A stretch of 63,487 bases of DNA, counting the filler, from Octopus bimaculoides (Eukaryota), in NCBI RefSeq assembly GCF_001194135.2. It is 6 parts of 6 records of this genome, joined end to end, with 100 filler letters (N's around TTAATTAATTAA, not from the genome) between each part and the next. Parts side by side here need not be neighbours in the genome. Positions count along the whole stretch, not along the records: positions 45,283 to 58,661 come from NC_068990.1; 5 more parts are not named here. One strand, 5' to 3'. The position numbers were made by a program, and so were the translations under genes. The notes under the pieces were generated by a model, which had not been told where the DNA came from, made no database searches, and worked only from the letters and a program-made list of their open reading frames with translations. This document shows, piece by piece, positions 49,736 to 58,661 of the stretch (the first letter of the stretch is position 1; the number at the start of each line of letters is the position of its first letter).

Positions 49736-50429
49736 CACTTTTTTAAAATCAATATATAAACAATTTGAAAATAAACTTTCAAATTGAAAAGAAAAAAAAA
49801 CATCTTTCAGTTTCATTTTAGTGACCGTTAAATGCCGAATTTGGCTGAGTTTGCTCCTTAAATTTCTGGATATTTAAAACGAAAATAATATTTTAGGTTA
49901 TATATTCAAGAGGACGTTGCTAATTCCATATCTGTTGCTTTTCAAAAAGATGCCCAAGAAGGGAGAATTTATGTGGTCACTCAAACAGTATAATGTAGAA
50001 GCCAAATTTCGCAAACATACGACAGTGTCTCTTGACTTGCAAGAAATGGTATCCACATTTCACTCACATTGTATCCTACACTCTTAAGAGAGGATGAGTG
50101 CATTTTTATAAAGCACCCCAGGGTTTTCGGAACGTTGTTCATAGTTAGAACGTCTTCCATCATAGACCTTCTTTGATTACGGCTAACCTGTTAGTAACCT
50201 GTTAGCGATTTGAAATCTCTTTACAATATGATTTATTATCATCATTTTTAGTTGTACCAGAATTGGCTTTACGCTTTTAGAGAAACTGAAATGGTGGCAC
50301 TCCTAAAGATATTAGCGGTTTAAGTTGAGATAAATTAAAATAGTGTCAACTAGTGACTGAACCTGCATCACCATCCATCTCGATATATTGGAGTGCTCGC
50401 CACACTTTTCTTTTTAATATATTGAATAT

Positions 50430-50643
50430 AGCTTTCAAATTTTGGCACAGGACCAGCAATGTTTAGGGGTGGGGTAAGGCCATTACATCAATCCCAGTGT
50501 TCAACTGGTACTTATTTTATCGACTTCGAAAGGATGAAAAGCAAAGTCAACCTCGGTGGGGTTTGAACTCAGAACGTAAAGACGAACGAAACACCACTAG
50601 GCATTTTGCCTGGCGTGCTAACGATTCTGTCAGCTCGCCACCT
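50430..50643 (-). mobile_element. SINE family A
   Basis: Reverse-complement copy ending ctaacgattctgtcagctcgccacctt. Confidence 0.8.
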
Positions 50644-51289
50644 TATATCGAATATTGATTTCTTTTGTCGGTGGGAAGCTTAGATTAGTGCTACACGATT
50701 TGACATCCAGCATTTAGTTAAATCGCTTTATATTCTAAGTTAAAAGTTGATCAAAGTTTACTTAATTTCTCAAGCTTACAAAGTCAGCAAAAAAACATTT
50801 CCTAATGATCAAGCCGGTTTGTAATCAAAAGATTCCCATCGGTTAATTCAGATTAATTCTGTATCTGAAACCATATCATCGAATGCCTTCTTCCCTGTTT
50901 TTAGTCGGTAGTGGCGGGATTTGAGGGAGATTTGCTTACTATCTCTAGAAGCTCAAGCGAACGCGTAGATGTTCCTTCCTTGGCTCGGAATAAGAACCGG
51001 GCCGTTACTAAATGTTTTCTCTATATTTGTGAATTTGTGCCTAAGTTAGAAATCATTGTTATTATAACAGGCGCAGAAGAACGCAGAAGAGATGCCTTTA
51101 AATGCCATGTCTATTGTGGCTGAAAGAACGTTACAATAAGAACCAGAAATGATATGGAACGTTTTCAGAAGTCTGTACTACATACCTGTAACGTTTAACC
51201 AGTCAAAAAAGTTTCGCTCTCAATAAAGGAGACTCAACATTTGACGAGAAAGCTTCACTAGTCAAAAGACAGAAACACATCAGCCAAGA

Positions 51290-54200
51290 ATGAAATCTAA
51301 CCAAAGCAAAGGTCCATCTAAACACATCGGTCGAGACGGCATCACCAAATTAGGGAGTGTAAGCAGTGAATTTGGGAGTCTCTCTAGTGATGAACTAGGG
51401 AGTACAACTAGCGAATTAGGAAGTATTGCAAGTGAACGAGCGAGCTCAAGTAGTGAACAAGAAGATGTCATCTGCGAAGAGAGCATCGACGTTGGAAAGG
51501 CACTTGGCGGAGAAAAAGGGAACTTTTCTATTCTCAAAGGAAGGAAGACTCGTCAACCAGATTATCTTACCGATGAAAAAGAAGCTCGTATCAGTCCACA
51601 AGAGAGAACAGCCAGTTCAAAAAGGGAAATTCCCCAATCACCAACGAAGCTTGATGCAACAGAGGCGTCTGAACATAGAAGAAGAGAGAGGAGTATCGTC
51701 AGTAATCAACTAGGGTCTATAACCAGTGAATACGGAAGCTACGGTAGTGAACAAGCAAGCCTAAGTAGTGAACAAGAGGATGCCATCTCCGAAGAGACCA
51801 TCATTGCTGAAGCCGAAAAGAGGAACTTGTCTTTCCCCGCAAAAAGGACGACTGGTCAACCAGATTATCATGCCGATGTAAAAGGGGTTCGTATCAGTCC
51901 ACAAGGGAACATAATTAGTCAAACCAGGGAAAATCCCCAATCACGAGCGAAACTTGATGCAACAGGGAGCATCGCCAGTAGTCAACTAGGGAGTGTTACC
52001 ACTGAATACGGAAGCCCAGGAAGTGAACAAGCGAGCCTATGTAGTGACGAAGAAACCCTCATCTTTCCACAAGGAAGAATAATCTGCGATCAAAGGGCCG
52101 TCACCAGTAAAGACGACTGCTGCCTCTATTCACGACTGAAGCGCATCAGTGAAGAAGGCAGTATTATCAGTGAAGAAGAGATCCACTTTAGTAAAAGAGA
52201 CGGCTTCGTTTGTGAGCAAACCATCACCGGTCAACAAAGGCCCCACTCTTGTACAGGGAAGGGCATCGTTTGTGAACAAGGCAACATAATCTGTCGACAA
52301 TGTGGTTCCACATGCCCACAAGAGAAGATCATCAGTCGACAAAAGTCCAACATTTGTGCAGGGAAGGGCTTCGTTTGTGAACAAAGCAATGTAACCTGTC
52401 AAGAATGTGGCCTCACATGCCAACAAGAGAAGGTCATCAGTCAACAAAAGTTTTGCACTTGTGCAAAAGAGGGCTTCGTTTGCGATCGAAGCAAAATAAT
52501 CTGTCAACGATGTGGCTTCACATGTCCAAGGGAGGACGTCGTCAGTCAACAAAAGGCCCAGATTTATACAAAAGAGGTCTTAGTTTGTGAACAAAGCAAC
52601 ATAACCGGTCAAGAACAGACCCCCACTAATATACAAAGGGGCCCAATTATTCCAGAAGACAGCGTCATTAGTAAAGAAAGTGACGTCAAAAGTCATCCTG
52701 AGAGCATCACTAGTCAACAAGTAGACGTCGACAGTCAACGAGAGAGCGTCACTAGTAAGGAACAAGACGTCAGCAATCAGCCAGAGAGCATCACTTGTCA
52801 AGAAGGAGAGGTCGACAGAAAACGAGAAAGCATCACAAGTCAACCAGGAATCGTCGGCAGTGCTCGAGAGAGCGTCGTTAGTCAACAATTAGACGTCGAC
52901 AGTCAGCGAGAGTGCCTCATTACTGAAGACGGTGATGTCAAAAGTCAACGAGAGAGCATTACTAGTCAAGAAGGACACATCGACAGTAAACGAGAGAGCA
53001 TCTCAAGTCAACAAAAAATCGTCGACAGTCCTCGACAGAGCGTCACTAGTCAAGAAGGTGATGTCAAAAGTCAACGAGAGAGCATTACTAGTCAAGAAGG
53101 ACACATCGACAGAGAGAGCATCTCAAGTCAACAAAAAACCGTCGACAGTCCTCGACAGAGCGTCACTAGTCAAGAAGGTGAAGTCAAAAGTCAACGAAAG
53201 AGCATTACTAGTCAAGAAGGACACATCGACAGTAAACGAGAGAGCATCGCAAGTCAACAAAAAATCGTCGACAGTCCTCGAGAGAGCGTCACTAGTCAAC
53301 AATTAGATGTCGACAGTCAGCAAGAGTGCATCATTAGGGAAGAAGGTGATGTCAAAAGTCAACGAGAGAGCATTACTAGTCAAGAAGGACTCATCGACAG
53401 TCAACAAGGGAGCGTCACTAGTCCACACATATTCGTCGTAAGTCCTCGAGAGAGCGTCACTAGTCAAGAAGGTGATGTCAAAAGTCAACGAGAGAGCATT
53501 ACTAGTCAAGGACATATCGACAGTCAACGAGGGAGCGTCACTAGTCCACAAAACATCGTCGACAGTCCTCGACAGAGCGTCACTAGTCAAGAAGGTCATG
53601 TCAAAAGTCAACGAGAGAGCATTACTAGTCAAGAAGAACACATCGACAGTAAAGGAGAGAGCATCTCAAGTCAACAAGAAATCATCGACAGTCCTCGACA
53701 GAGCATCACTAGTCAGCAATTAGATGTCGACAGTCAAAGAGAGTGCATCATTACTGAAGAAGGTGATGTCAAAAGTCAACGAGAGAGCATTAATAGTCAA
53801 GAAGGACGCATCGACAGTCAACGAGAGAGCGTCACTAGTCCACAAAACATCGTCGACAGTCCTCGACAGAGCGTCACTAGTCAAGAAGGTCATGTCAAAA
53901 GTCAACGAGAGAGCATTACTAGTCAAGAAGAACGAATCGGCAGTAAACGAGAGAGCATCTCAAGTCAACAAGGAATCGTCGACAGTCCTCGAGAGAGCAT
54001 CACTAGTCAACAATTAGATGTCGACAGTCAACAAGAGTGCATCATTAGGGAAGAAGGTGATGTCAAAAGTCAACGAGAGAGCATTACTAGTCAAGAAGGA
54101 CACATCGACAGTAAACGAGGGAGCATCAATAGTCCACAAATATGCGTCGAAAGTCCTCGAGAGAGCGTCATTAGTCAAGAAGGTGATGTCAAAAGTCAAC

Positions 54201-57200
54201 GAGAGAGCATTACTAGTCAAGGACATATCGACAGTCAACGAGGGAGCGTCACTAGTCCACAAAAAATCGTCGACAGTCCTCGACAGTGCGTCACTAGTCA
54301 AGAAGGTCATGTCAAAAGTCAACGAGAGAGCATTACTAGTCAAGAAGAACACACCGACAGTAAACGAGAGAGCATCTCAAGTCAACAAGAAATCGTCGAC
54401 AGTCCTCGACAGAGCATCACTAGTCAACAATTAGATGTCGACAGTCAAAGAGAGTGCATCATTACTGAAGAAGGTGATGTCAAAAGTCAACGAGAGAGCA
54501 TTAATAGTCAAGAAGGACGCATCGACAGTAAACGAGAGAGCATATCAAGTCAACAAAAAATCGTCGACAGTCCTCGGGAGAGCGTCACTAGTCAAGAAGG
54601 TGATGTCAAAAGTCAACGAGAGAGCATTACTGGTAAAGAAGGACATATCGACAGTAAACGAGAGAGCATCACAAGTCAACAAAGAACCGTCGAGAGTCCT
54701 CGAGAGAGTGTCACTAGTCAACAATTAGATGTCGACAATCAACAAGAGTGCATCATTACTGAAGAAGCTGTCGTCAAAAGTCAACGAGATAGCATTACTA
54801 GTCAAGAAGGAATCATCGACAGTGCTCGAGAGAGCATCAGTAGTCAACTAATTTACATGAACACTCAACGAGAGTGCATCATTAGTGAAGAAGATGTCAA
54901 AAGTGAACGAGAGATCATTACTAGTCAAGAACACATCGGCAGTAAACGAGTGAGCATCACTAGTCAAGAAGGTGACATCAAAAGTCAGCGAGAGAGCAAT
55001 ACAAGTCAAGAAGAACACATCGACAGTAAACGAGAGAGCATCTCAAGTCAACAAGGAATCATCGCCAGTCCTCGAGAGAGCGTCACTAGTCAACAAATAG
55101 ATGTCGACAGTCAACAAGAGTGCATCATTAGGGAAGAAGGTGTCGTCAAAAGTGAACGAGAGAGCATTACTAGTCAAGGACACATCGACAGTAAACGAGA
55201 GAGCATCTCAAGTCAACAAGGAATCATCGCCAGTCCTCGAGAGAGCGTCACTAGTCAACAATTAGACGTCGATAGTCAACAAGAGTGCATCAATAGTCAA
55301 GAAGGTGACGTCAAAAGTGAACGAGAGAGCATTACTAGTCAAGGACACATCGACAGTAAACGAGAGAGCATCTCAAGTCAACATGGAATCATCGCCAGTC
55401 CCCGAGAGAGCGTCACTAGTCAACAAATAGACGTCGACAGTCAACAAGAGTGCATCATTAGGGAAGAAGGTGTCGTCAAAAGTGAACGAGAGAGCATTAC
55501 TAGTCAAGGACACATCGACAGTAAACGAGAGAGCATCTCAAGTCAACAAGGAATCATCGCCAGTCCTCGAGAGAGCGTCACTAGTCAACAAATAGACGTC
55601 GACAGTCAACAAGAGTGCATCATTAGGGAAGAAGGTGTCGTCAAAAGTGAACGAGAGAGCNNNNNNNNNNNNNNNNNNNNNNNNNNNNNNNNNNNNNNNN
55701 NNNNNNNNNNNNNNNNNNNNNNNNNNNNNNNNNNNNNNNNNNNNNNNNNNNNNNNNNNNNNNNNNNNNNNNNNNNNNNNNNNNNNNNNNNNNNNNNNNNN
55801 NNNNNNNNNNNNNNNNNNNNNNNNNNNNNNNNNNNNNNNNNNNNNNNNNNNNNNNNNNNNNNNNNNNNNNNNNNNNNNNNNNNNNNNNNNNNNNNNNNNN
55901 NNNNNNNNNNNNNNNNNNNNNNNNNNNNNNNNNNNNNNNNNNNNNNNNNNNNNNNNNNNNNNNNNNNNNNNNNNNNNNNNNNNNNNNNNNNNNNNNNNNN
56001 NNNNNNNNNNNNNNNNNNNNNNNNNNNNNNNNNNNNNNNNNNNNNNNNNNNNNNNNNNNNNNNNNNNNNNNNNNNNNNNNNNNNNNNNNNNNNNNNNNNN
56101 NNNNNNNNNNNNNNNNNNNNNNNNNNNNNNNNNNNNNNNNNNNNNNNNNNNNNNNNNNNNNNNNNNNNNNNNNNNNNNNNNNNNNNNNNNNNNNNNNNNN
56201 NNNNNNNNNNNNNNNNNNNNNNNNNNNNNNNNNNNNNNNNNNNNNNNNNNNNNNNNNNNNNNNNNNNNNNNNNNNNNNNNNNNNNNNNNNNNNNNNNNNN
56301 NNNNNNNNNNNNNNNNNNNNNNNNNNNNNNNNNNNNNNNNNNNNNNNNNNNNNNNNNNNNNNNNNNNNNNNNNNNNNNNNNNNNNNNNNNNNNNNNNNNN
56401 NNNNNNNNNNNNNNNNNNNNNNNNNNNNNNNNNNNNNNNNNNNNNNNNNNNNNNNNNNNNNNNNNNNNNNNNNNNNNNNNNNNNNNNNNNNNNNNNNNNN
56501 NNNNNNNNNNNNNNNNNNNNNNNNNNNNNNNNNNNNNNNNNNNNNNNNNNNNNNNNNNNNNNNNNNNNNNNNNNNNNNNCCGAGAGAGCGTCACTAGTCA
56601 ACAAATAGACGTCGACAGTCAACAAGAGTGCATCATTAGGGAAGAAGGTGTCGTCAAAAGTGAACGAGAGAGCATTACTAGTCAAGGACACATCGACAGT
56701 AAACGAGAAAGCATCTCAAGTCAACAAGGAATCATCGCCAGTCCTCGAGAGAGCGTCACTAGTCAACAACTAGACGTCCACAGTCAACAAGAGTGCATCA
56801 TTAGTCAAGAAGGTGATGTCAAAAGTGAACGAGAGAGCATTACTAGTCACGAAAGAGTCATTGACAGGCACCGGGAGAGCATCACTATTCAAAAAGACTT
56901 TGACAGTCAACGAGAGAGCATCATCCATCATCAGGGATGCCTTAAAATTCAACAAGAAACCCCCACTAGTAAAGGTAACGTCACCAGTCAGCGAGAAAGG
57001 TTTACTAGTGAAGAAAGATACGTAAAATTTCAACGAGAGAGCATCACTAGTCAAAACGAAGCCGTCAAAAGTCAACGAGAGTGTATTACTTGTCAAGGAG
57101 ACGTCGACAGTGAACGAGAGAGCATTTGTAGTCAAGGATTCGTCAGATATCAACGAGAGAGCTTCAGTAGTCAACAAGGAGTGTGCATCACTTGTCAACA

Positions 57201-58425
57201 AGAAGAGAACATGACTATTCAAGAAGGATACGGGAAAATTCAACGAGAGAGCATCACTAGACAAAAAGAGACCATTCCCGTTCATCAAGAGACCCACACC
57301 ATTCAAGATGGAAGCTTCTACAGTGCACATCAGCAAGCCAGCCCCGTCAGTCAAGAAAGATGCTTAAACAGCCAAGAAATCTACATCGACCACCAAGCCA
57401 GACACATCTGTCAACAAGCTATATTCACCAATCAGAACAAAGAGCAAATCCCCAGCTGTCCCGAAAGTAGCCTCAGTAGTCTAAAAGGAAGCGCTACCAG
57501 TGAAGAAGAGAGCAAGCCTACCAGTCAAGAAGTCCTTGCCAATCAAGATGGAGCCATTCTCAGTGAGCAAGGGCGTATAACCACTCAAAAAGCGATCCTC
57601 ATCAACAAGCGAATGAAACCTATCTGTCAACGTGCGAATACACCTAAGATACGAGTGAATCTAGCTATTCAGCAGGCGGGCCTCAGAAATCAACAGGATC
57701 GTTTCACTAGTCAAAAACCATGCTCAGTTTGTCAGCAAGGGAGTCTTTCCAGACACCGAGTCATCGCCTGCAACCGATATGTGAACCATCAAATAAACAT
57801 CACCAAATCAAGCAAGTGCTTTACCAACCAACAAAGGAACTTCATTCAACATACGGGCCATAGTAACCAATATCGGAACCTTACCAACTATCAACGGAGC
57901 CTCACCAGCCATCAACAGAGCCTCTCTAACCAACAACATTTTCTCGTTATGCAAGAAATGGCCGTCGCTGATCTAATGCAAAACGTCGTTGTCAAACGAA
58001 GGACATTTACGTCCCCACAGGATATCTACACAAGACAACAATGTATCCAGTATAGGAGCCACCCCAACGAGCAGATCTTCCATATTGGGCAACAAGAGTA
58101 TGCCGGCTGTCGACACGTGGGCCTCAGCTCACAAGAGGGAAACAGCAGCAAATATGTATTTCGCACCAGCAAACACGTGTGCCATGACAACAAGCAACAT
58201 TACCACATCAGGCATCAAGGTGGCCTCACTAGGCCACAAGTCGGCCCCAAAAGACAAAAAGGGTGTCCTTTGTGCAGTCATCAGGTCACTGCTTCTGCAA
58301 GTAATAAAAATTCAGGATCCAAGAAGCGATGCTTACCGGCCACCATATGTGTCCCACCAGTAAAGAAAGGGCAGTGCAAGTTAACAAATATCGAGCTTCA
58401 TCGGTCAACGAAGAAATTTCAGTAG
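51290..58425 (+). CDS. Giant orphan S/Q/E/R-rich tandem-repeat protein (about 2,370 aa), apparently single exon, interrupted only by an assembly gap
   Basis: Open for 1,457 codons from ATG 51290 to the gap at 55661. The same repeat frame resumes at 56581 (CGA GAG AGC, RES) and I read it stop-free to TAG 58423-58425 (614 aa). The 1-nt frame offset lies within the estimated N gap. The repeat indels I noted are multiples of 3. An in-frame TGA lies at 51242 and AATAAA at 58520. No family recognised. Confidence 0.8.
52680..57300 (+). repeat. Coding minisatellite: 21/42-bp units with higher-order periods of 165/168, 294, 417 and 711 bp
   Basis: Units such as SQRESIT/SQEGHID/SKRESIS/SQQKIVD/SPRESVT. 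The marker ttagATGtcgac has its ATG at 53307, 53724, 54018, 54435 and 54729. Confidence 0.92.
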
Positions 58426-58519
58426 CTATCAAGCAAGACTTACCATTTGAAGAGTGTCCTTCATTGTGCATGTAGCAATCGAGGAGGGAGAAAAATCAAC
58501 AAACATGATATTGTAACTG

Positions 58520-58525
58520 AATAAA
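58520..58525 (+). terminator. Putative polyadenylation signal of the repeat-protein gene
   Basis: AATAAA about 95 nt after the stop codon. The surrounding sequence is AT-rich, so a chance occurrence is possible. Confidence 0.4.
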
Positions 58526-58628
58526 TTATTTAGAACTCCTGATTCGTCTTACAGTCTCACCAAGATCACATACATACATACATGCATACATACATACATA
58601 CATGCGTGCGTGCACACATGCATATTTG

Positions 58629-58661
<33 letters not shown>

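What the first reader, a model, noticed from the sequence alone, without database searches (positions are those of the whole stretch)
51290..58425. Giant orphan heptad-repeat protein: the only intact gene in 63 kb
Seen: about 6.2 kb of sequenced, stop-free, apparently intronless coding sequence. The architecture is an acidic S/E N-terminus, a Cys-rich module, roughly 200 heptads of consensus S-[QKP]-x-x-x-[IV]-[TDSK] (counting the gap), and a basic Q/H/R/K/C-rich C-terminus. No signal peptide or TM segment is evident at the ATG. Unit-length variants (42, 39 and 36 bp) keep the frame, implying protein-level selection. Established: SQ is the ATM/ATR consensus, SP is a proline-directed kinase site, and [KR]RxS and SxxE resemble basophilic and CK2 sites. 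Inference: either a CTD-like multisite phospho-scaffold or condensate protein, or a beta-solenoid/cross-beta structural polymer with an Ile/Val and Ser/Thr ladder every 7 residues. It is a candidate lineage-specific cephalopod protein, for example in germ line or muscle.
Basis: partly seen in the sequence, partly recalled or inferred. Interest (0 to 1): 0.85.

Follow-up and report, generated by a model that had tools for sequence, protein, structure and literature searches.

The report
Giant orphan heptad-repeat protein gene
This is a real, selection-maintained, intron-free reading frame for a roughly 2,000-2,400-residue protein with no detectable relatives. It was built entirely by amplification of one 7-residue unit and is predicted to be a floppy, charged, serine/glutamine-rich chain; it is interesting as gene birth from a minisatellite, but its function is untested.

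Summary
An ATG at 51290 opens a stop-free frame to the gap (1,457 codons). After the gap another frame runs 614 codons to TAG at 58423-58425, with AATAAA 95 nt further on.

Read literally through the 919 N, the two halves are out of frame. However, the last 259 bp before the gap and the first 259 bp after it are 97.3% identical and in the same codon phase. Any closure of 71+165n nt therefore keeps the frame.

The core is 90 units of 14 aa (SQRESITSQEGDVK). A DNA profile of the unit also finds decayed, in-phase copies through the "unique" N-terminus, Cys module, C-terminus and 5' leader. The whole gene is therefore one aged heptad array.

- **Selection on the frame:** 0 stops against 6.5-9.4 expected in the core; P about 1e-12 and 1e-8 for the termini; all indels are multiples of 3.
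- **No selection on residues:** omega is about 1.
- **No fold:** AlphaFold gives pLDDT about 34 with no secondary structure.
- **No relatives:** exhaustive searches find only convergent repeat proteins from unrelated taxa.

The best reading is an orphan, intrinsically disordered, multivalent (probably phospho-regulated) scaffold or spacer protein. A beta-solenoid is not supported. S/T-Q is not retained in the old copies. Expression, taxon and function remain untested.

The parts
51220..51267 (+). Degenerate copy of the repeat unit in the 5' leader. It is in phase with the ORF but is interrupted by in-frame stops (TGA at 51242-51244; a TAA further upstream).
   Evidence: nhmmer with the unit profile gives E=8.7e-6, phase ok. 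The sequence reads ...TGA RESFTSQKTETHQPR ATG.
51290..51292 (+). Proposed start codon. It is the first in-frame ATG after the stop at 51242, in the context AAGAATGA (A at -3).
51290..52099 (+). Acidic Ser/Glu-rich N-terminal region (aa 1-270). It holds an internal ~90-aa duplication: aa 33-124 (51386-51661), aa 138-225 (51701-51964), and a partial third copy aa 230-269 (51977-52096). It contains decayed in-phase heptad units.
   Evidence: Composition and charge. The duplicates are 59% identical at aa level and 77% at nt level, omega 0.75 and 0.54. S/T lag-7 periodicity z=6.1. nhmmer hits at 51392-51470, 51706-51782, 51887-51922 and 51980-52061, all in phase.
52100..52657 (+). Cys-rich module (aa 271-456, 20 Cys), made of 105-bp (35-aa, five-heptad) units starting at 52202 (partial), 52262, 52367, 52472 and 52577 (decayed). 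The motif C-x6-C-x2-C-x3-C is invariant in the three full units. It derives from the same heptad, with Cys at several positions that are Ser in the core heptad.
   Evidence: TRF reports 105 bp x3.6. Unit listing and omega 1.05-1.11. Hydrophobic lag-7 z=4.4. In-phase nhmmer hits at 52144-52552.
52658..55660 (+). Core tandem array before the gap: 73 units of 14 aa (42 nt; some 39 nt), consensus SQRESITSQEGDVK. Higher-order periods are 126 nt, 711 nt and, next to the gap, 165 nt.
   Evidence: TRF reports 42 bp x72; autocorrelation; wraparound alignment; minimum-spanning-tree (MST) substitution analysis.
55661..56579 (.). Assembly gap (919 N, estimated length) inside the youngest 165-bp higher-order repeats. 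The frame is preserved for any true length of 71+165n nt.
56580..57272 (+). Core array after the gap: 17 units. The first ~6 are near-identical to the pre-gap copies; the remainder decay progressively.
57277..58422 (+). Basic, Gln/His/Arg/Lys/Cys-rich C-terminal region (382 aa, net +0.07 per residue, 16 Cys, with basic clusters such as PKRQK and SKKR). It consists of decayed in-phase heptads.
   Evidence: Composition. Q lag-7 z=4.6 and S/T z=3.5. In-phase nhmmer hits at 57282-57760. Sequence.
58423..58425 (+). Stop codon TAG.
58520..58525 (+). AATAAA polyadenylation-type hexamer 95 nt after the stop. It is the only one in the 236-nt 3' flank.

Best explanation
**What it is**
A genuine protein-coding, single-exon gene (ATG 51290 to TAG 58425, interrupted only by an assembly gap). 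It encodes a taxonomically restricted protein of about 2,000-2,400 residues.

**How it arose (shown)**
- The whole coding sequence arose by in-frame amplification of one 21-nt unit.
- That unit was organised into 42-nt units, then into 105-, 126-, 165- and 711-nt higher-order units.
- The youngest copies sit in the middle, around the gap. Progressively decayed copies form what look like 'unique' N- and C-terminal domains.
- Selection has kept the frame open and in phase, but has barely constrained which residue sits where.

**How it most likely works (inferred)**
- The protein acts through bulk, multivalent properties of a long, intrinsically disordered, mildly acidic polyampholyte (S 20%, Q 13%, E 12%, about 30% charged residues, one Ile/Val per heptad).
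- In other words, it is an extended spacer, brush or scaffold.
- Its many Ser sites (S-x-x-E, S-P, [KR]R-x-S and S-Q consensus matches) would let kinases tune charge and binding.
- The N-terminal C-x6-C-x2-C-x3-C module and the basic Cys/His-rich C-terminal tail are the likeliest anchoring or partner-binding ends.
For: **The ORF is real**
- The termini are open with P = 2e-12 and 7e-9 given base composition, while the other five frames have 11-38 stops each.
- In the core array, 252 substitutions on a minimum spanning tree of 89 units produced 0 stops against 6.5-9.4 expected (P = 1.4e-3 to 7e-5).
- Every unit-length variant is a multiple of 3 nt (42/39/48).
- All 83 nhmmer matches to the unit are on the + strand and in phase, including 16 in the 'non-repeat' coding ends. 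There are none in the 6-kb upstream flank.
- GC and A/T skew step up at 51283 and stay raised through the last window profiled, ending 58282.
- An AATAAA hexamer lies 95 nt after the stop.

**The gap does not break it**
- The flanks are 97.3% identical and share the same codon phase.

**Residue identity is unconstrained**
- Omega is about 1.07 in the core, 1.05-1.11 in the Cys units and 0.54-0.75 in the N-terminal duplicates. Differences by codon position are 100/75/77.

**Disorder**
- AlphaFold2 on 277 aa of repeats with an 11-row paralogue alignment gives pLDDT 33.7, pTM 0.11 and no secondary structure.
- The N-terminal 456 aa give pLDDT 35.
- In the charge-hydropathy plot every part except the Cys module falls on the disordered side.

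**Intracellular rather than secreted**
- The N-terminus is hydrophilic, there is no TM segment, and there are in-frame stops just upstream.

**Orphan**
-.
Against: - No expression, peptide or orthologue evidence could be obtained with these tools.
- Omega of about 1 is also what an unconstrained sequence would show.
- AlphaFold with a shallow, paralogue-only alignment can miss real folds, and low pLDDT is only a proxy for disorder.
- Kinase-motif matches are consensus matches only.
- S/T-Q is not retained in the aged copies, so at least that motif is not demonstrably selected.
- The frame across the gap is inferred from repeat register, not read.
- A missed upstream exon cannot be formally excluded.
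Confidence: 0.5

Rival explanations
1. Ordered fibrous polymer. The heptads would fold into a beta-solenoid or cross-beta ladder, or into a coiled coil, possibly trimeric, with Ile/Val at position a and Gln at position d.
For: - There is strict 7-residue spacing of Ile/Val (z=19.6) and of Gln (z=8.6).
- The near-threshold Pfam and PDB matches are all to coiled-coil families: RNase_Y_N, FBF1, DUF16 and the P22 tail needle gp26 at E=5.8e-4.
- Many database hits are coiled-coil or phage-fibre proteins with I-T-S-Q-like heptads.
Against: - AlphaFold predicts neither helix nor strand (pLDDT 34).
- There is only one hydrophobic residue per heptad.
- Pro occupies the would-be d position in 18 of 89 units, and Gly occurs once per 14 residues.
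- 14 of 86 units are 13 residues long. This shifts the heptad phase by -1, once per 55-residue higher-order repeat near the gap.
- About 30% of residues are charged.
- All Pfam scores are below the curated cut-offs.
Confidence: 0.12
2. Untranslated or recently dead sequence: a minisatellite-derived array whose unit happens to lack stops, so the long ORF would have no protein-level function.
For: - Omega is about 1 everywhere it was measured, and third codon positions are not enriched for differences.
- No homologue was found and no annotation was recovered from any database.
- The array spills into the 5' leader, where it does carry stops.
Against: - The decayed termini (838 codons) are barely recognisable as repeats, yet they have no stop (P = 2e-12 and 7e-9) and no frameshift; 16 of 16 detectable old coding copies are in phase.
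- The core shows 0 stops against 6.5-9.4 expected.
- All of roughly 9 apparently independent indels (my count from the unit listing) are multiples of 3.
- The one copy that lies outside the ORF has acquired stops, which shows what neutral decay looks like at this locus.
Confidence: 0.12
3. Secreted matrix, mucin-like or biomineral phosphoprotein whose signal-peptide exon lies upstream and was missed. Acidic S-x-E / S-x-x-E repeats would act as Golgi-kinase substrates that bind cations or form a gel.
For: - Among the better database matches are repeat proteins that their sources name mucin-like: the signal-peptide-bearing Penaeus mucin-5AC-like protein (SPRPSVTSPNSFVS units), plus Haliotis mucin-3A-like and a Nucella protein with TPRESVT heptads.
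- S-Q-E occurs in about 41 of 89 units and S-x-x-E in about 74 of 89.
Against: - In-frame TGA and TAA codons lie directly upstream of the ATG.
- No acceptor-like polypyrimidine tract lies in the purine-rich 51245-51400 stretch (my reading of the sequence).
- The N-terminus is hydrophilic.
- The matches cover the repeats only and are spread over unrelated taxa, so they are convergent.
- The content of Pro and Thr, the usual O-glycan carriers, is low.
Confidence: 0.1
4. Dedicated S/T-Q cluster protein: a giant substrate or decoy for ATM/ATR/DNA-PK-type kinases that recruits FHA/BRCT readers.
For: - There are 106 S/T-Q sites in 2,071 sequenced residues, at 8.3 per 100 aa in the core.
- This is far above the published definition of at least 3 sites within 50-100 aa (PMC10942620).
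Against: - The density is a by-product of the unit sequence.
- In the aged copies S/T-Q is at or below shuffle expectation: N-terminus 4 against 7.3, C-terminus 6 against 8.1, old post-gap units 6 against 3.8.
- Gln periodicity survives in those copies while the preceding Ser does not.
- Nuclear localisation was not tested.
Confidence: 0.08

Closest known systems
S/T-Q cluster domain (SCD) proteins (definition of Traven and Heierhorst as quoted in PMC10942620)
   Same: It meets the formal density criterion many times over. It is Q/S-rich and predicted disordered, like most SCDs.
   Different: Known SCDs are short (tens of residues) and sit within folded checkpoint or repair proteins. Here the motif recurs about 100 times as part of a tandem unit, is not retained in the older copies, and no kinase dependence is known.
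Ki-67 (giant single exon of tandem repeats; disordered, highly phosphorylated brush with a basic chromatin-binding C-terminus); from my own knowledge
   Same: A very large repeat-encoding exon, a long charged disordered body, and a basic C-terminal end. The mode of action would be an analogous brush or spacer.
   Different: No FHA domain, PP1-binding motif or Ki-67 repeat was found by Pfam. The units are 14 aa rather than 122 aa, and the body is acidic rather than basic. This is an analogy only, not homology.
Nopp140 / Treacle-type acidic Ser-cluster phosphoproteins; from my own knowledge
   Same: Repeated acidic Ser stretches matching CK2-type S-x-x-E sites, interleaved with basic residues, and predicted disorder.
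   Different: No LisH or SRP40 domains. The repeats here are far shorter, more numerous and strictly heptadic, and lie in a single exon.
RNA polymerase II CTD heptads (YSPTSPS)
   Same: Tandem 7-residue, Ser-rich units, some with S-P, that could be read by kinases and phospho-readers.
   Different: A different consensus (S-[QPK]-R-E-S-[IV]-T / S-Q-E-G-D-V-K), no Tyr, and Pro in only about 20% of 14-mers. It is not attached to an RPB1 catalytic body.
Convergent heptad / 14-mer repeat proteins found by the exhaustive search: lamprey LOC144721785 (ADNVTSQQEITKLQ), Penaeus mucin-5AC-like (SPRPSVTSPNSFVS), Nucella KAL8570226 (TPRESVT), Pecten 'papilin-like' (CSESGVT), and phage-fibre-like ORFs (TITSQEG)
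   Same: Local motif resemblance, 15-41% identity over the repeats only, with E down to 6e-46.
   Different: None matches aa 1-319, and none turned up in the C-terminal search. The hits come from lamprey, rodent, frog, fish, shrimp, gastropods, a bivalve, bacteria and metagenomes, and have unrelated non-repeat parts. This pattern indicates convergence, not family membership.
Genes born from short-repeat amplification (for example fish antifreeze glycoproteins, involucrin); from my own knowledge
   Same: The coding sequence was generated by in-frame expansion of a very short unit, with weak residue-level constraint and rapid copy turnover.
   Different: Here even the apparent terminal 'domains' and part of the leader are decayed copies of the same unit. 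The product is far larger, and no function is known.

Membership tests
S/T-Q cluster domain (SCD) | At least 3 S/T-Q within a stretch of 50-100 residues (PMC10942620) | tested here: met
   8.3 S/T-Q per 100 aa over 1,001 core residues; 106 in total.
S/T-Q cluster domain (SCD) | S/T-Q sites are functional targets of ATM/ATR-type kinases | not testable with these tools
   Indirect evidence only: S/T-Q is at or below chance in the decayed N- and C-terminal copies, which gives no sign of selection on the dipeptide.
Alpha-helical coiled coil | Hydrophobic residues at both a and d of an unbroken heptad register, with helix-compatible sequence | tested here: not met
   One Ile/Val per heptad. The would-be d position is Q/P/K (P in 18 of 89 units). 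Gly occurs once per 14 aa. 13-residue units shift the register. AlphaFold predicts no helix. Coiled-coil Pfam families score below their cut-offs.
Beta-solenoid / cross-beta repeat polymer | Repeats predicted or shown to stack as regular beta coils with an apolar core | tested here: inconclusive
   AlphaFold2 with a paralogue alignment gives pLDDT 33.7 and essentially no strands. High charge and phase-breaking 13-mers argue against. The prediction is not proof, because the alignment is shallow.
Secreted mucin / PTS-repeat or matrix phosphoprotein | N-terminal signal peptide and Pro/Thr/Ser-rich O-glycosylated repeats | tested here: not met
   Hydrophilic N-terminus MKSNQSKGPSKH..., in-frame stops upstream, and maximum hydropathy 1.05. 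Pro is about 2% and Thr about 5% in the core.
RNA polymerase II CTD | YSPTSPS-type heptads at the C-terminus of an RPB1 catalytic subunit | tested here: not met
   Different consensus and no RPB1 or any other Pfam domain.
Ki-67 / chromosome-periphery brush | FHA domain, PP1-binding site, 122-aa Ki-67 repeats, LR chromatin-binding domain | tested here: not met
   No Pfam family reaches its cut-off anywhere in the protein. The resemblance is architectural only.
Any described protein family (homology) | Significant sequence similarity outside low-complexity repeats | tested here: not met
   Zero hits for the N-terminal 470 aa and the C-terminal 414 aa. Exhaustive phmmer gives no match starting before residue 320. 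PDB returns nothing for the N-terminal 470 aa at E<=0.1 (a single chance-level match at E=0.18) and nothing for the C-terminal 414 aa at E<=1. Metagenome and viral DNA scans are negative.

The most novel reading that the evidence does not exclude
A large, functional protein-coding gene was born and grew entirely from a single 21-nt minisatellite unit. The array's oldest copies have drifted into new modules: Ser-to-Cys changes created a C-x6-C-x2-C-x3-C putative metal-binding or disulfide module at one end, and a basic Cys/His-rich tail formed at the other. The young centre keeps expanding as a disordered, phospho-tunable brush. On this reading it would be a clean natural example of de novo domain birth by repeat ageing within one gene.
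Probability: 0.25. Interest if true: 0.6.

Novelty: new member of a known kind. Interest (0 to 1): 0.4.

Why it matters
If the gene is expressed, it is a clear case of how a very long protein can be made from almost nothing. A 7-codon unit was amplified in frame, and selection acted on openness, length and composition rather than on sequence. The locus shows the whole age series in a single gene:
- 95-99% identical higher-order copies at the centre;
- recognisable 14-mers around them;
- barely detectable in-phase relics that now look like 'unique' N- and C-terminal domains;
- one relic outside the ORF that has accumulated stops.

That makes it a useful natural model for repeat-driven gene and domain birth, and for the sequence 'grammar' of disordered polyampholytes. 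It also matters practically. The gene sits on an assembly gap and has no homologues, and I recovered no predicted protein for it from the protein collections searched, so annotation pipelines may be missing genes of this kind.

Tried and rejected
- **Family and structure searches.** Pfam on all three parts gave only sub-threshold coiled-coil or low-complexity families. PDB sequence and profile searches gave only a chance-level toxin match (E=0.18) and the P22 tail needle gp26 at E=5.8e-4, a heptad-composition match.
- **Protein database searches.** Two word-indexed searches with the N- and C-termini returned nothing. Exhaustive phmmer of aa 1-1200 returned 281 hits, all repeat-driven. I read the sequences of 18 hits and looked up the source of 30. 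They are unrelated repeat proteins from vertebrates, a shrimp, molluscs, an acanthocephalan, bacteria or phage, and metagenomes. I rejected them as homologues.
- **Other look-ups.** Exact look-up of the post-gap product in public assemblies: not on record. Degenerate-pattern DNA scans of metagenome contigs (C-terminus) and viral contigs (N-terminus): no relatives.
- **RNA and flank checks.** The 46 sub-threshold Rfam hits (nearly all microRNA families, plus one snoRNA and one viral cis element) sit on microsatellites and are artefacts. There are no tRNA or SINE heads. Flank ORFs have no Pfam domain.
- **Not run or unresolved.** I did not run fold search, because both AlphaFold models have pLDDT of about 34-35 and any matches would be meaningless. 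I could not identify the source organism with the available collections, so the 'cephalopod' label stays unverified.
- **A naive test set aside.** The codon-position tally over all blastn self-hits mixes non-orthologous unit types. I replaced it with the minimum-spanning-tree analysis.

Full report
**1. What is in the sequence**

The piece is 45283-58661. It consists of about 6 kb of AT-rich, microsatellite-laden, ORF-poor flank, followed by one long + strand reading frame.

- The frame is open from 51245. The first ATG is at 51290, and it runs without a stop to the edge of the assembly gap at 55660 (4,371 nt, 1,457 codons).
- After the 919-N gap, a frame is open from the first sequenced base and ends at TAG 58423-58425 (614 codons).
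- GC rises from 0.34-0.39 to 0.43-0.48, and A/T skew rises from about 0 to +0.27-0.43. The step comes at 51283 and the raised values persist through the last window profiled, which ends at 58282.
- An AATAAA hexamer lies at 58520, 95 nt after the stop.
- The start context is AAGAATGA.
- Immediately upstream, in frame, lie TGA (51242) and a further TAA, so the ORF cannot simply be extended 5'.

**2. The gap, tested first**

Read literally through the N run, the two halves are out of frame: (56581-51290) mod 3 = 2. The N length is only an estimate, however.

- The last 259 nt before the gap (55402-55660) align without gaps to the first 259 nt after it (56580-56838) at 97.3% identity. Both segments start at codon position 3 of their respective frames.
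- The gap therefore lies inside a tract of 165-nt higher-order repeats (42+42+39+42 nt, 55 aa) whose copies are 95-99% identical. That explains why the assembly broke there.
- Any true length of 71+165n nt keeps one continuous frame. n=-2 corresponds to simply overlapping the two contig ends. n=5 gives 896 nt, close to the 919 estimate.
- The protein would be 1,985 to about 2,400 aa long.
- Continuity is thus strongly suggested but not read.

**3. Anatomy**

A wraparound alignment to the 14-residue consensus SQRESITSQEGDVK resolves 73 units before the gap and 17 after it.

- Unit lengths are 42 nt (71 units), 39 nt (14) and 48 nt (1), all multiples of three.
- By my count from the unit listing, they represent roughly nine independent indel events.
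- Column profiles are: S1, Q/P/K2, R3, E4, S/C5, I/V6, T/I/S7, S8, Q/E9, E/Q10, G11, D/H/I12, V/I13, D/K14.
- Higher-order periodicities occur at 42 aa, 237 aa (711 nt) and 55 aa (165 nt).

Upstream of the core lie two further regions:
- An acidic Ser/Glu-rich region (aa 1-270) that contains a roughly 90-aa internal duplication.
- A Cys-rich module (aa 271-456, 20 Cys) made of 35-aa units with an invariant C-x6-C-x2-C-x3-C motif.

Downstream of the core lies a basic Q/H/R/K/C-rich tail of 382 aa.

The protein contains no Trp and has no TM-like segment or signal-peptide-like N-terminus.

**4. The 'unique' ends are old copies of the same unit**

- Lag-7 periodicity persists outside the core: S/T in the N-terminus (z=6.1), hydrophobic residues in the Cys module (z=4.4), and Gln (z=4.6) and S/T (z=3.5) in the C-terminus.
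- A DNA profile of two tandem units, searched with nhmmer over the whole piece, finds 83 matches at E<=0.01, all on the + strand and all in phase with the reading frame.
- Seventeen of these lie outside 52657-57272. One merely straddles the 5' edge of the array (52652-52732). The other 16 are old copies: 10 in the N-terminal region and Cys module (51392-52552), five in the C-terminal region (57282-57760), and one in the 5' leader (51220-51267). The leader copy is the only one that contains stop codons.
- The 6-kb upstream flank and the minus strand have no matches.
- The gene is therefore one aged, in-frame heptad array, youngest in the centre and oldest at the edges.

**5. Is it under selection?**

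Three independent lines say the open frame is maintained:
- (a) Given their base composition, the 456-codon N-terminal and 382-codon C-terminal parts would be stop-free with P = 2e-12 and 7e-9. The other five frames of the same DNA have 11-38 stops each.
- (b) In the core, a minimum spanning tree over 89 units carries 252 nucleotide differences. With the observed mutation spectrum, 3.7% of random changes would create a stop, so 6.5-9.4 stops are expected. None is seen (P = 1.4e-3 to 7e-5).
- (c) All indels are 3n, and all detectable old coding copies are still in phase.

In contrast, residue identity is almost unconstrained:
- Among core units, 33 synonymous against 140 non-synonymous single changes give an omega-like ratio of 1.07.
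- Differences by codon position are 100/75/77.
- Non-synonymous changes are only mildly uneven across the 14 columns (p=0.04).
- Omega is 1.05-1.11 among Cys units, although the four Cys of the motif are invariant in the three full units.
- Omega is 0.75 and 0.54 for the N-terminal duplicates.

Selection on openness, length and composition without selection on sequence is the signature expected of a functional disordered repeat protein. It is not the signature of a folded domain or of junk.

**6. Structure**

- AlphaFold2 on 277 aa of the core, with an 11-row alignment of paralogous segments, gives mean pLDDT 33.7, pTM 0.11 and no helices or sheets.
- The N-terminal 456 aa as a single sequence give pLDDT 35, with only a weak hairpin (pLDDT 40-55) in the Cys module.
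- The charge-hydropathy criterion puts every part except the Cys module on the disordered side. The core is 30% charged, with net charge -0.07 per residue.
- A continuous coiled coil or solenoid is further disfavoured by Pro at column 2 in 18 of 89 units, by Gly once per 14 residues, and by 13-residue units that shift the heptad register once per 55 residues in the youngest tract.

**7. Relatives**

- No Pfam family reaches its cut-off.
- The PDB sequence and profile searches give only chance-level or heptad-composition matches.
- Word-indexed searches of 5.8 billion clusters with the N-terminal 470 aa and the C-terminal 414 aa return nothing.
- An exhaustive phmmer search of aa 1-1200 against 1.84 billion representatives returns 281 hits. 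Every best-matching stretch starts at residue 320 or later, and identities are 10-41%.
- Where named, the hits are a lamprey coiled-coil protein, guinea-pig 'mucin-2-like', shrimp 'mucin-5AC-like', fish nesprin-2, scallop 'papilin-like', abalone 'mucin-3A-like', frog VLIG GTPase, a marsupial butyrophilin, rat WDR88, a dog-whelk hypothetical protein, a phage TipJ tail protein, and assorted metagenomic ORFs.
- Their only common feature is a 7- or 14-residue repeat with a similar motif (for example TPRESVT, SPRPSVT, VTSQQEIT, TITSQEG). This is convergence, not homology.
- DNA-pattern scans of metagenome and viral contigs, and an exact-product look-up, are also negative.
- Within what these resources hold, the protein is an orphan.

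**8. How it most likely works**

Shown: a selection-maintained ORF; repeat origin of the whole coding sequence; lack of residue-level constraint; predicted disorder; no secretion signal.

Inferred:
- It is an intracellular, extended polyampholyte that acts through multivalency and bulk physical properties, as a spacer, brush or scaffold.
- Dense Ser sites match CK2-type S-x-x-E (S1...E4 in about 74 of 89 units), S-P (18 of 89), basophilic K-R-x-S (about 15 of 89) and S-Q. These would allow phosphorylation to tune charge and binding. They are consensus matches from established kinase specificities, not evidence of modification.
- The Cys4-motif module and the basic Cys/His tail are the most plausible specific binding or anchoring ends.
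- The ATM/ATR reading is weakened because S/T-Q is not retained in aged copies: 4 against 7.3 expected in the N-terminus and 6 against 8.1 in the C-terminus. Gln periodicity itself survives there.

**9. Verdict**

It is a new member of a known kind, namely taxonomically restricted tandem-repeat disordered proteins born by in-frame minisatellite amplification. Its unusually complete 'age series' within one gene is the main point of interest.

Interest is moderate (0.4), because expression and function are entirely untested.

Noticed in passing
window 51220-51267: A decayed copy of the coding repeat lies in the 5' leader, in phase with the ORF, but carries in-frame TAA and TGA codons. The array once extended 5' of the present ATG. 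This copy also shows what the repeat looks like when it is not protected by selection.
   Followed up: partly
window 45283-46930: A dense block of microsatellites (TATG/ACAT, CA, GT, GA/GAGT) with two 10-N assembly gaps (45770-45779, 46612-46621). Most of the 46 sub-threshold Rfam hits, including every top-scoring 'microRNA' match, fall in this block; the rest sit on the ACAT/TA microsatellite at 58563-58661. All are artefacts far below the gathering scores.
   Followed up: yes
window 48570-48617 / 49150-49197 and 49594-49696 / 50466-50568: One pair of direct copies (88% identical) and one pair of inverted copies (103 nt, 79%) in the upstream flank. They are probably fragments of interspersed repeats or MITE-like elements. 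No tRNA-like head and no Pfam-bearing ORF was found.
   Followed up: partly
window 52883-57282 versus 51283-52482 and 57283-58482: CpG observed/expected is about 0.9-1.2 in the young core array (CGA Arg codons, GTCGAC). It is only 0.5-0.8 in the decayed terminal coding regions. This fits either CpG decay with copy age or a lack of germline methylation over the array.
   Followed up: no
window 47683-48482: A locally GC-richer stretch (0.41-0.48) about 3 kb upstream of the ATG, with no ORF of note, no Pfam hit and a low CpG ratio. Its nature is unknown: possibly an old repeat or a regulatory or non-coding exon.
   Followed up: partly
window 52262-52576: In the three full 35-aa Cys units the four Cys of C-x6-C-x2-C-x3-C are invariant, although overall omega among the units is about 1.1. 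This is the only hint of residue-specific constraint in the whole protein. Several of these Cys sit at the heptad position that is Ser in the core array (AGT/AGC to TGT/TGC is a single change).
   Followed up: partly
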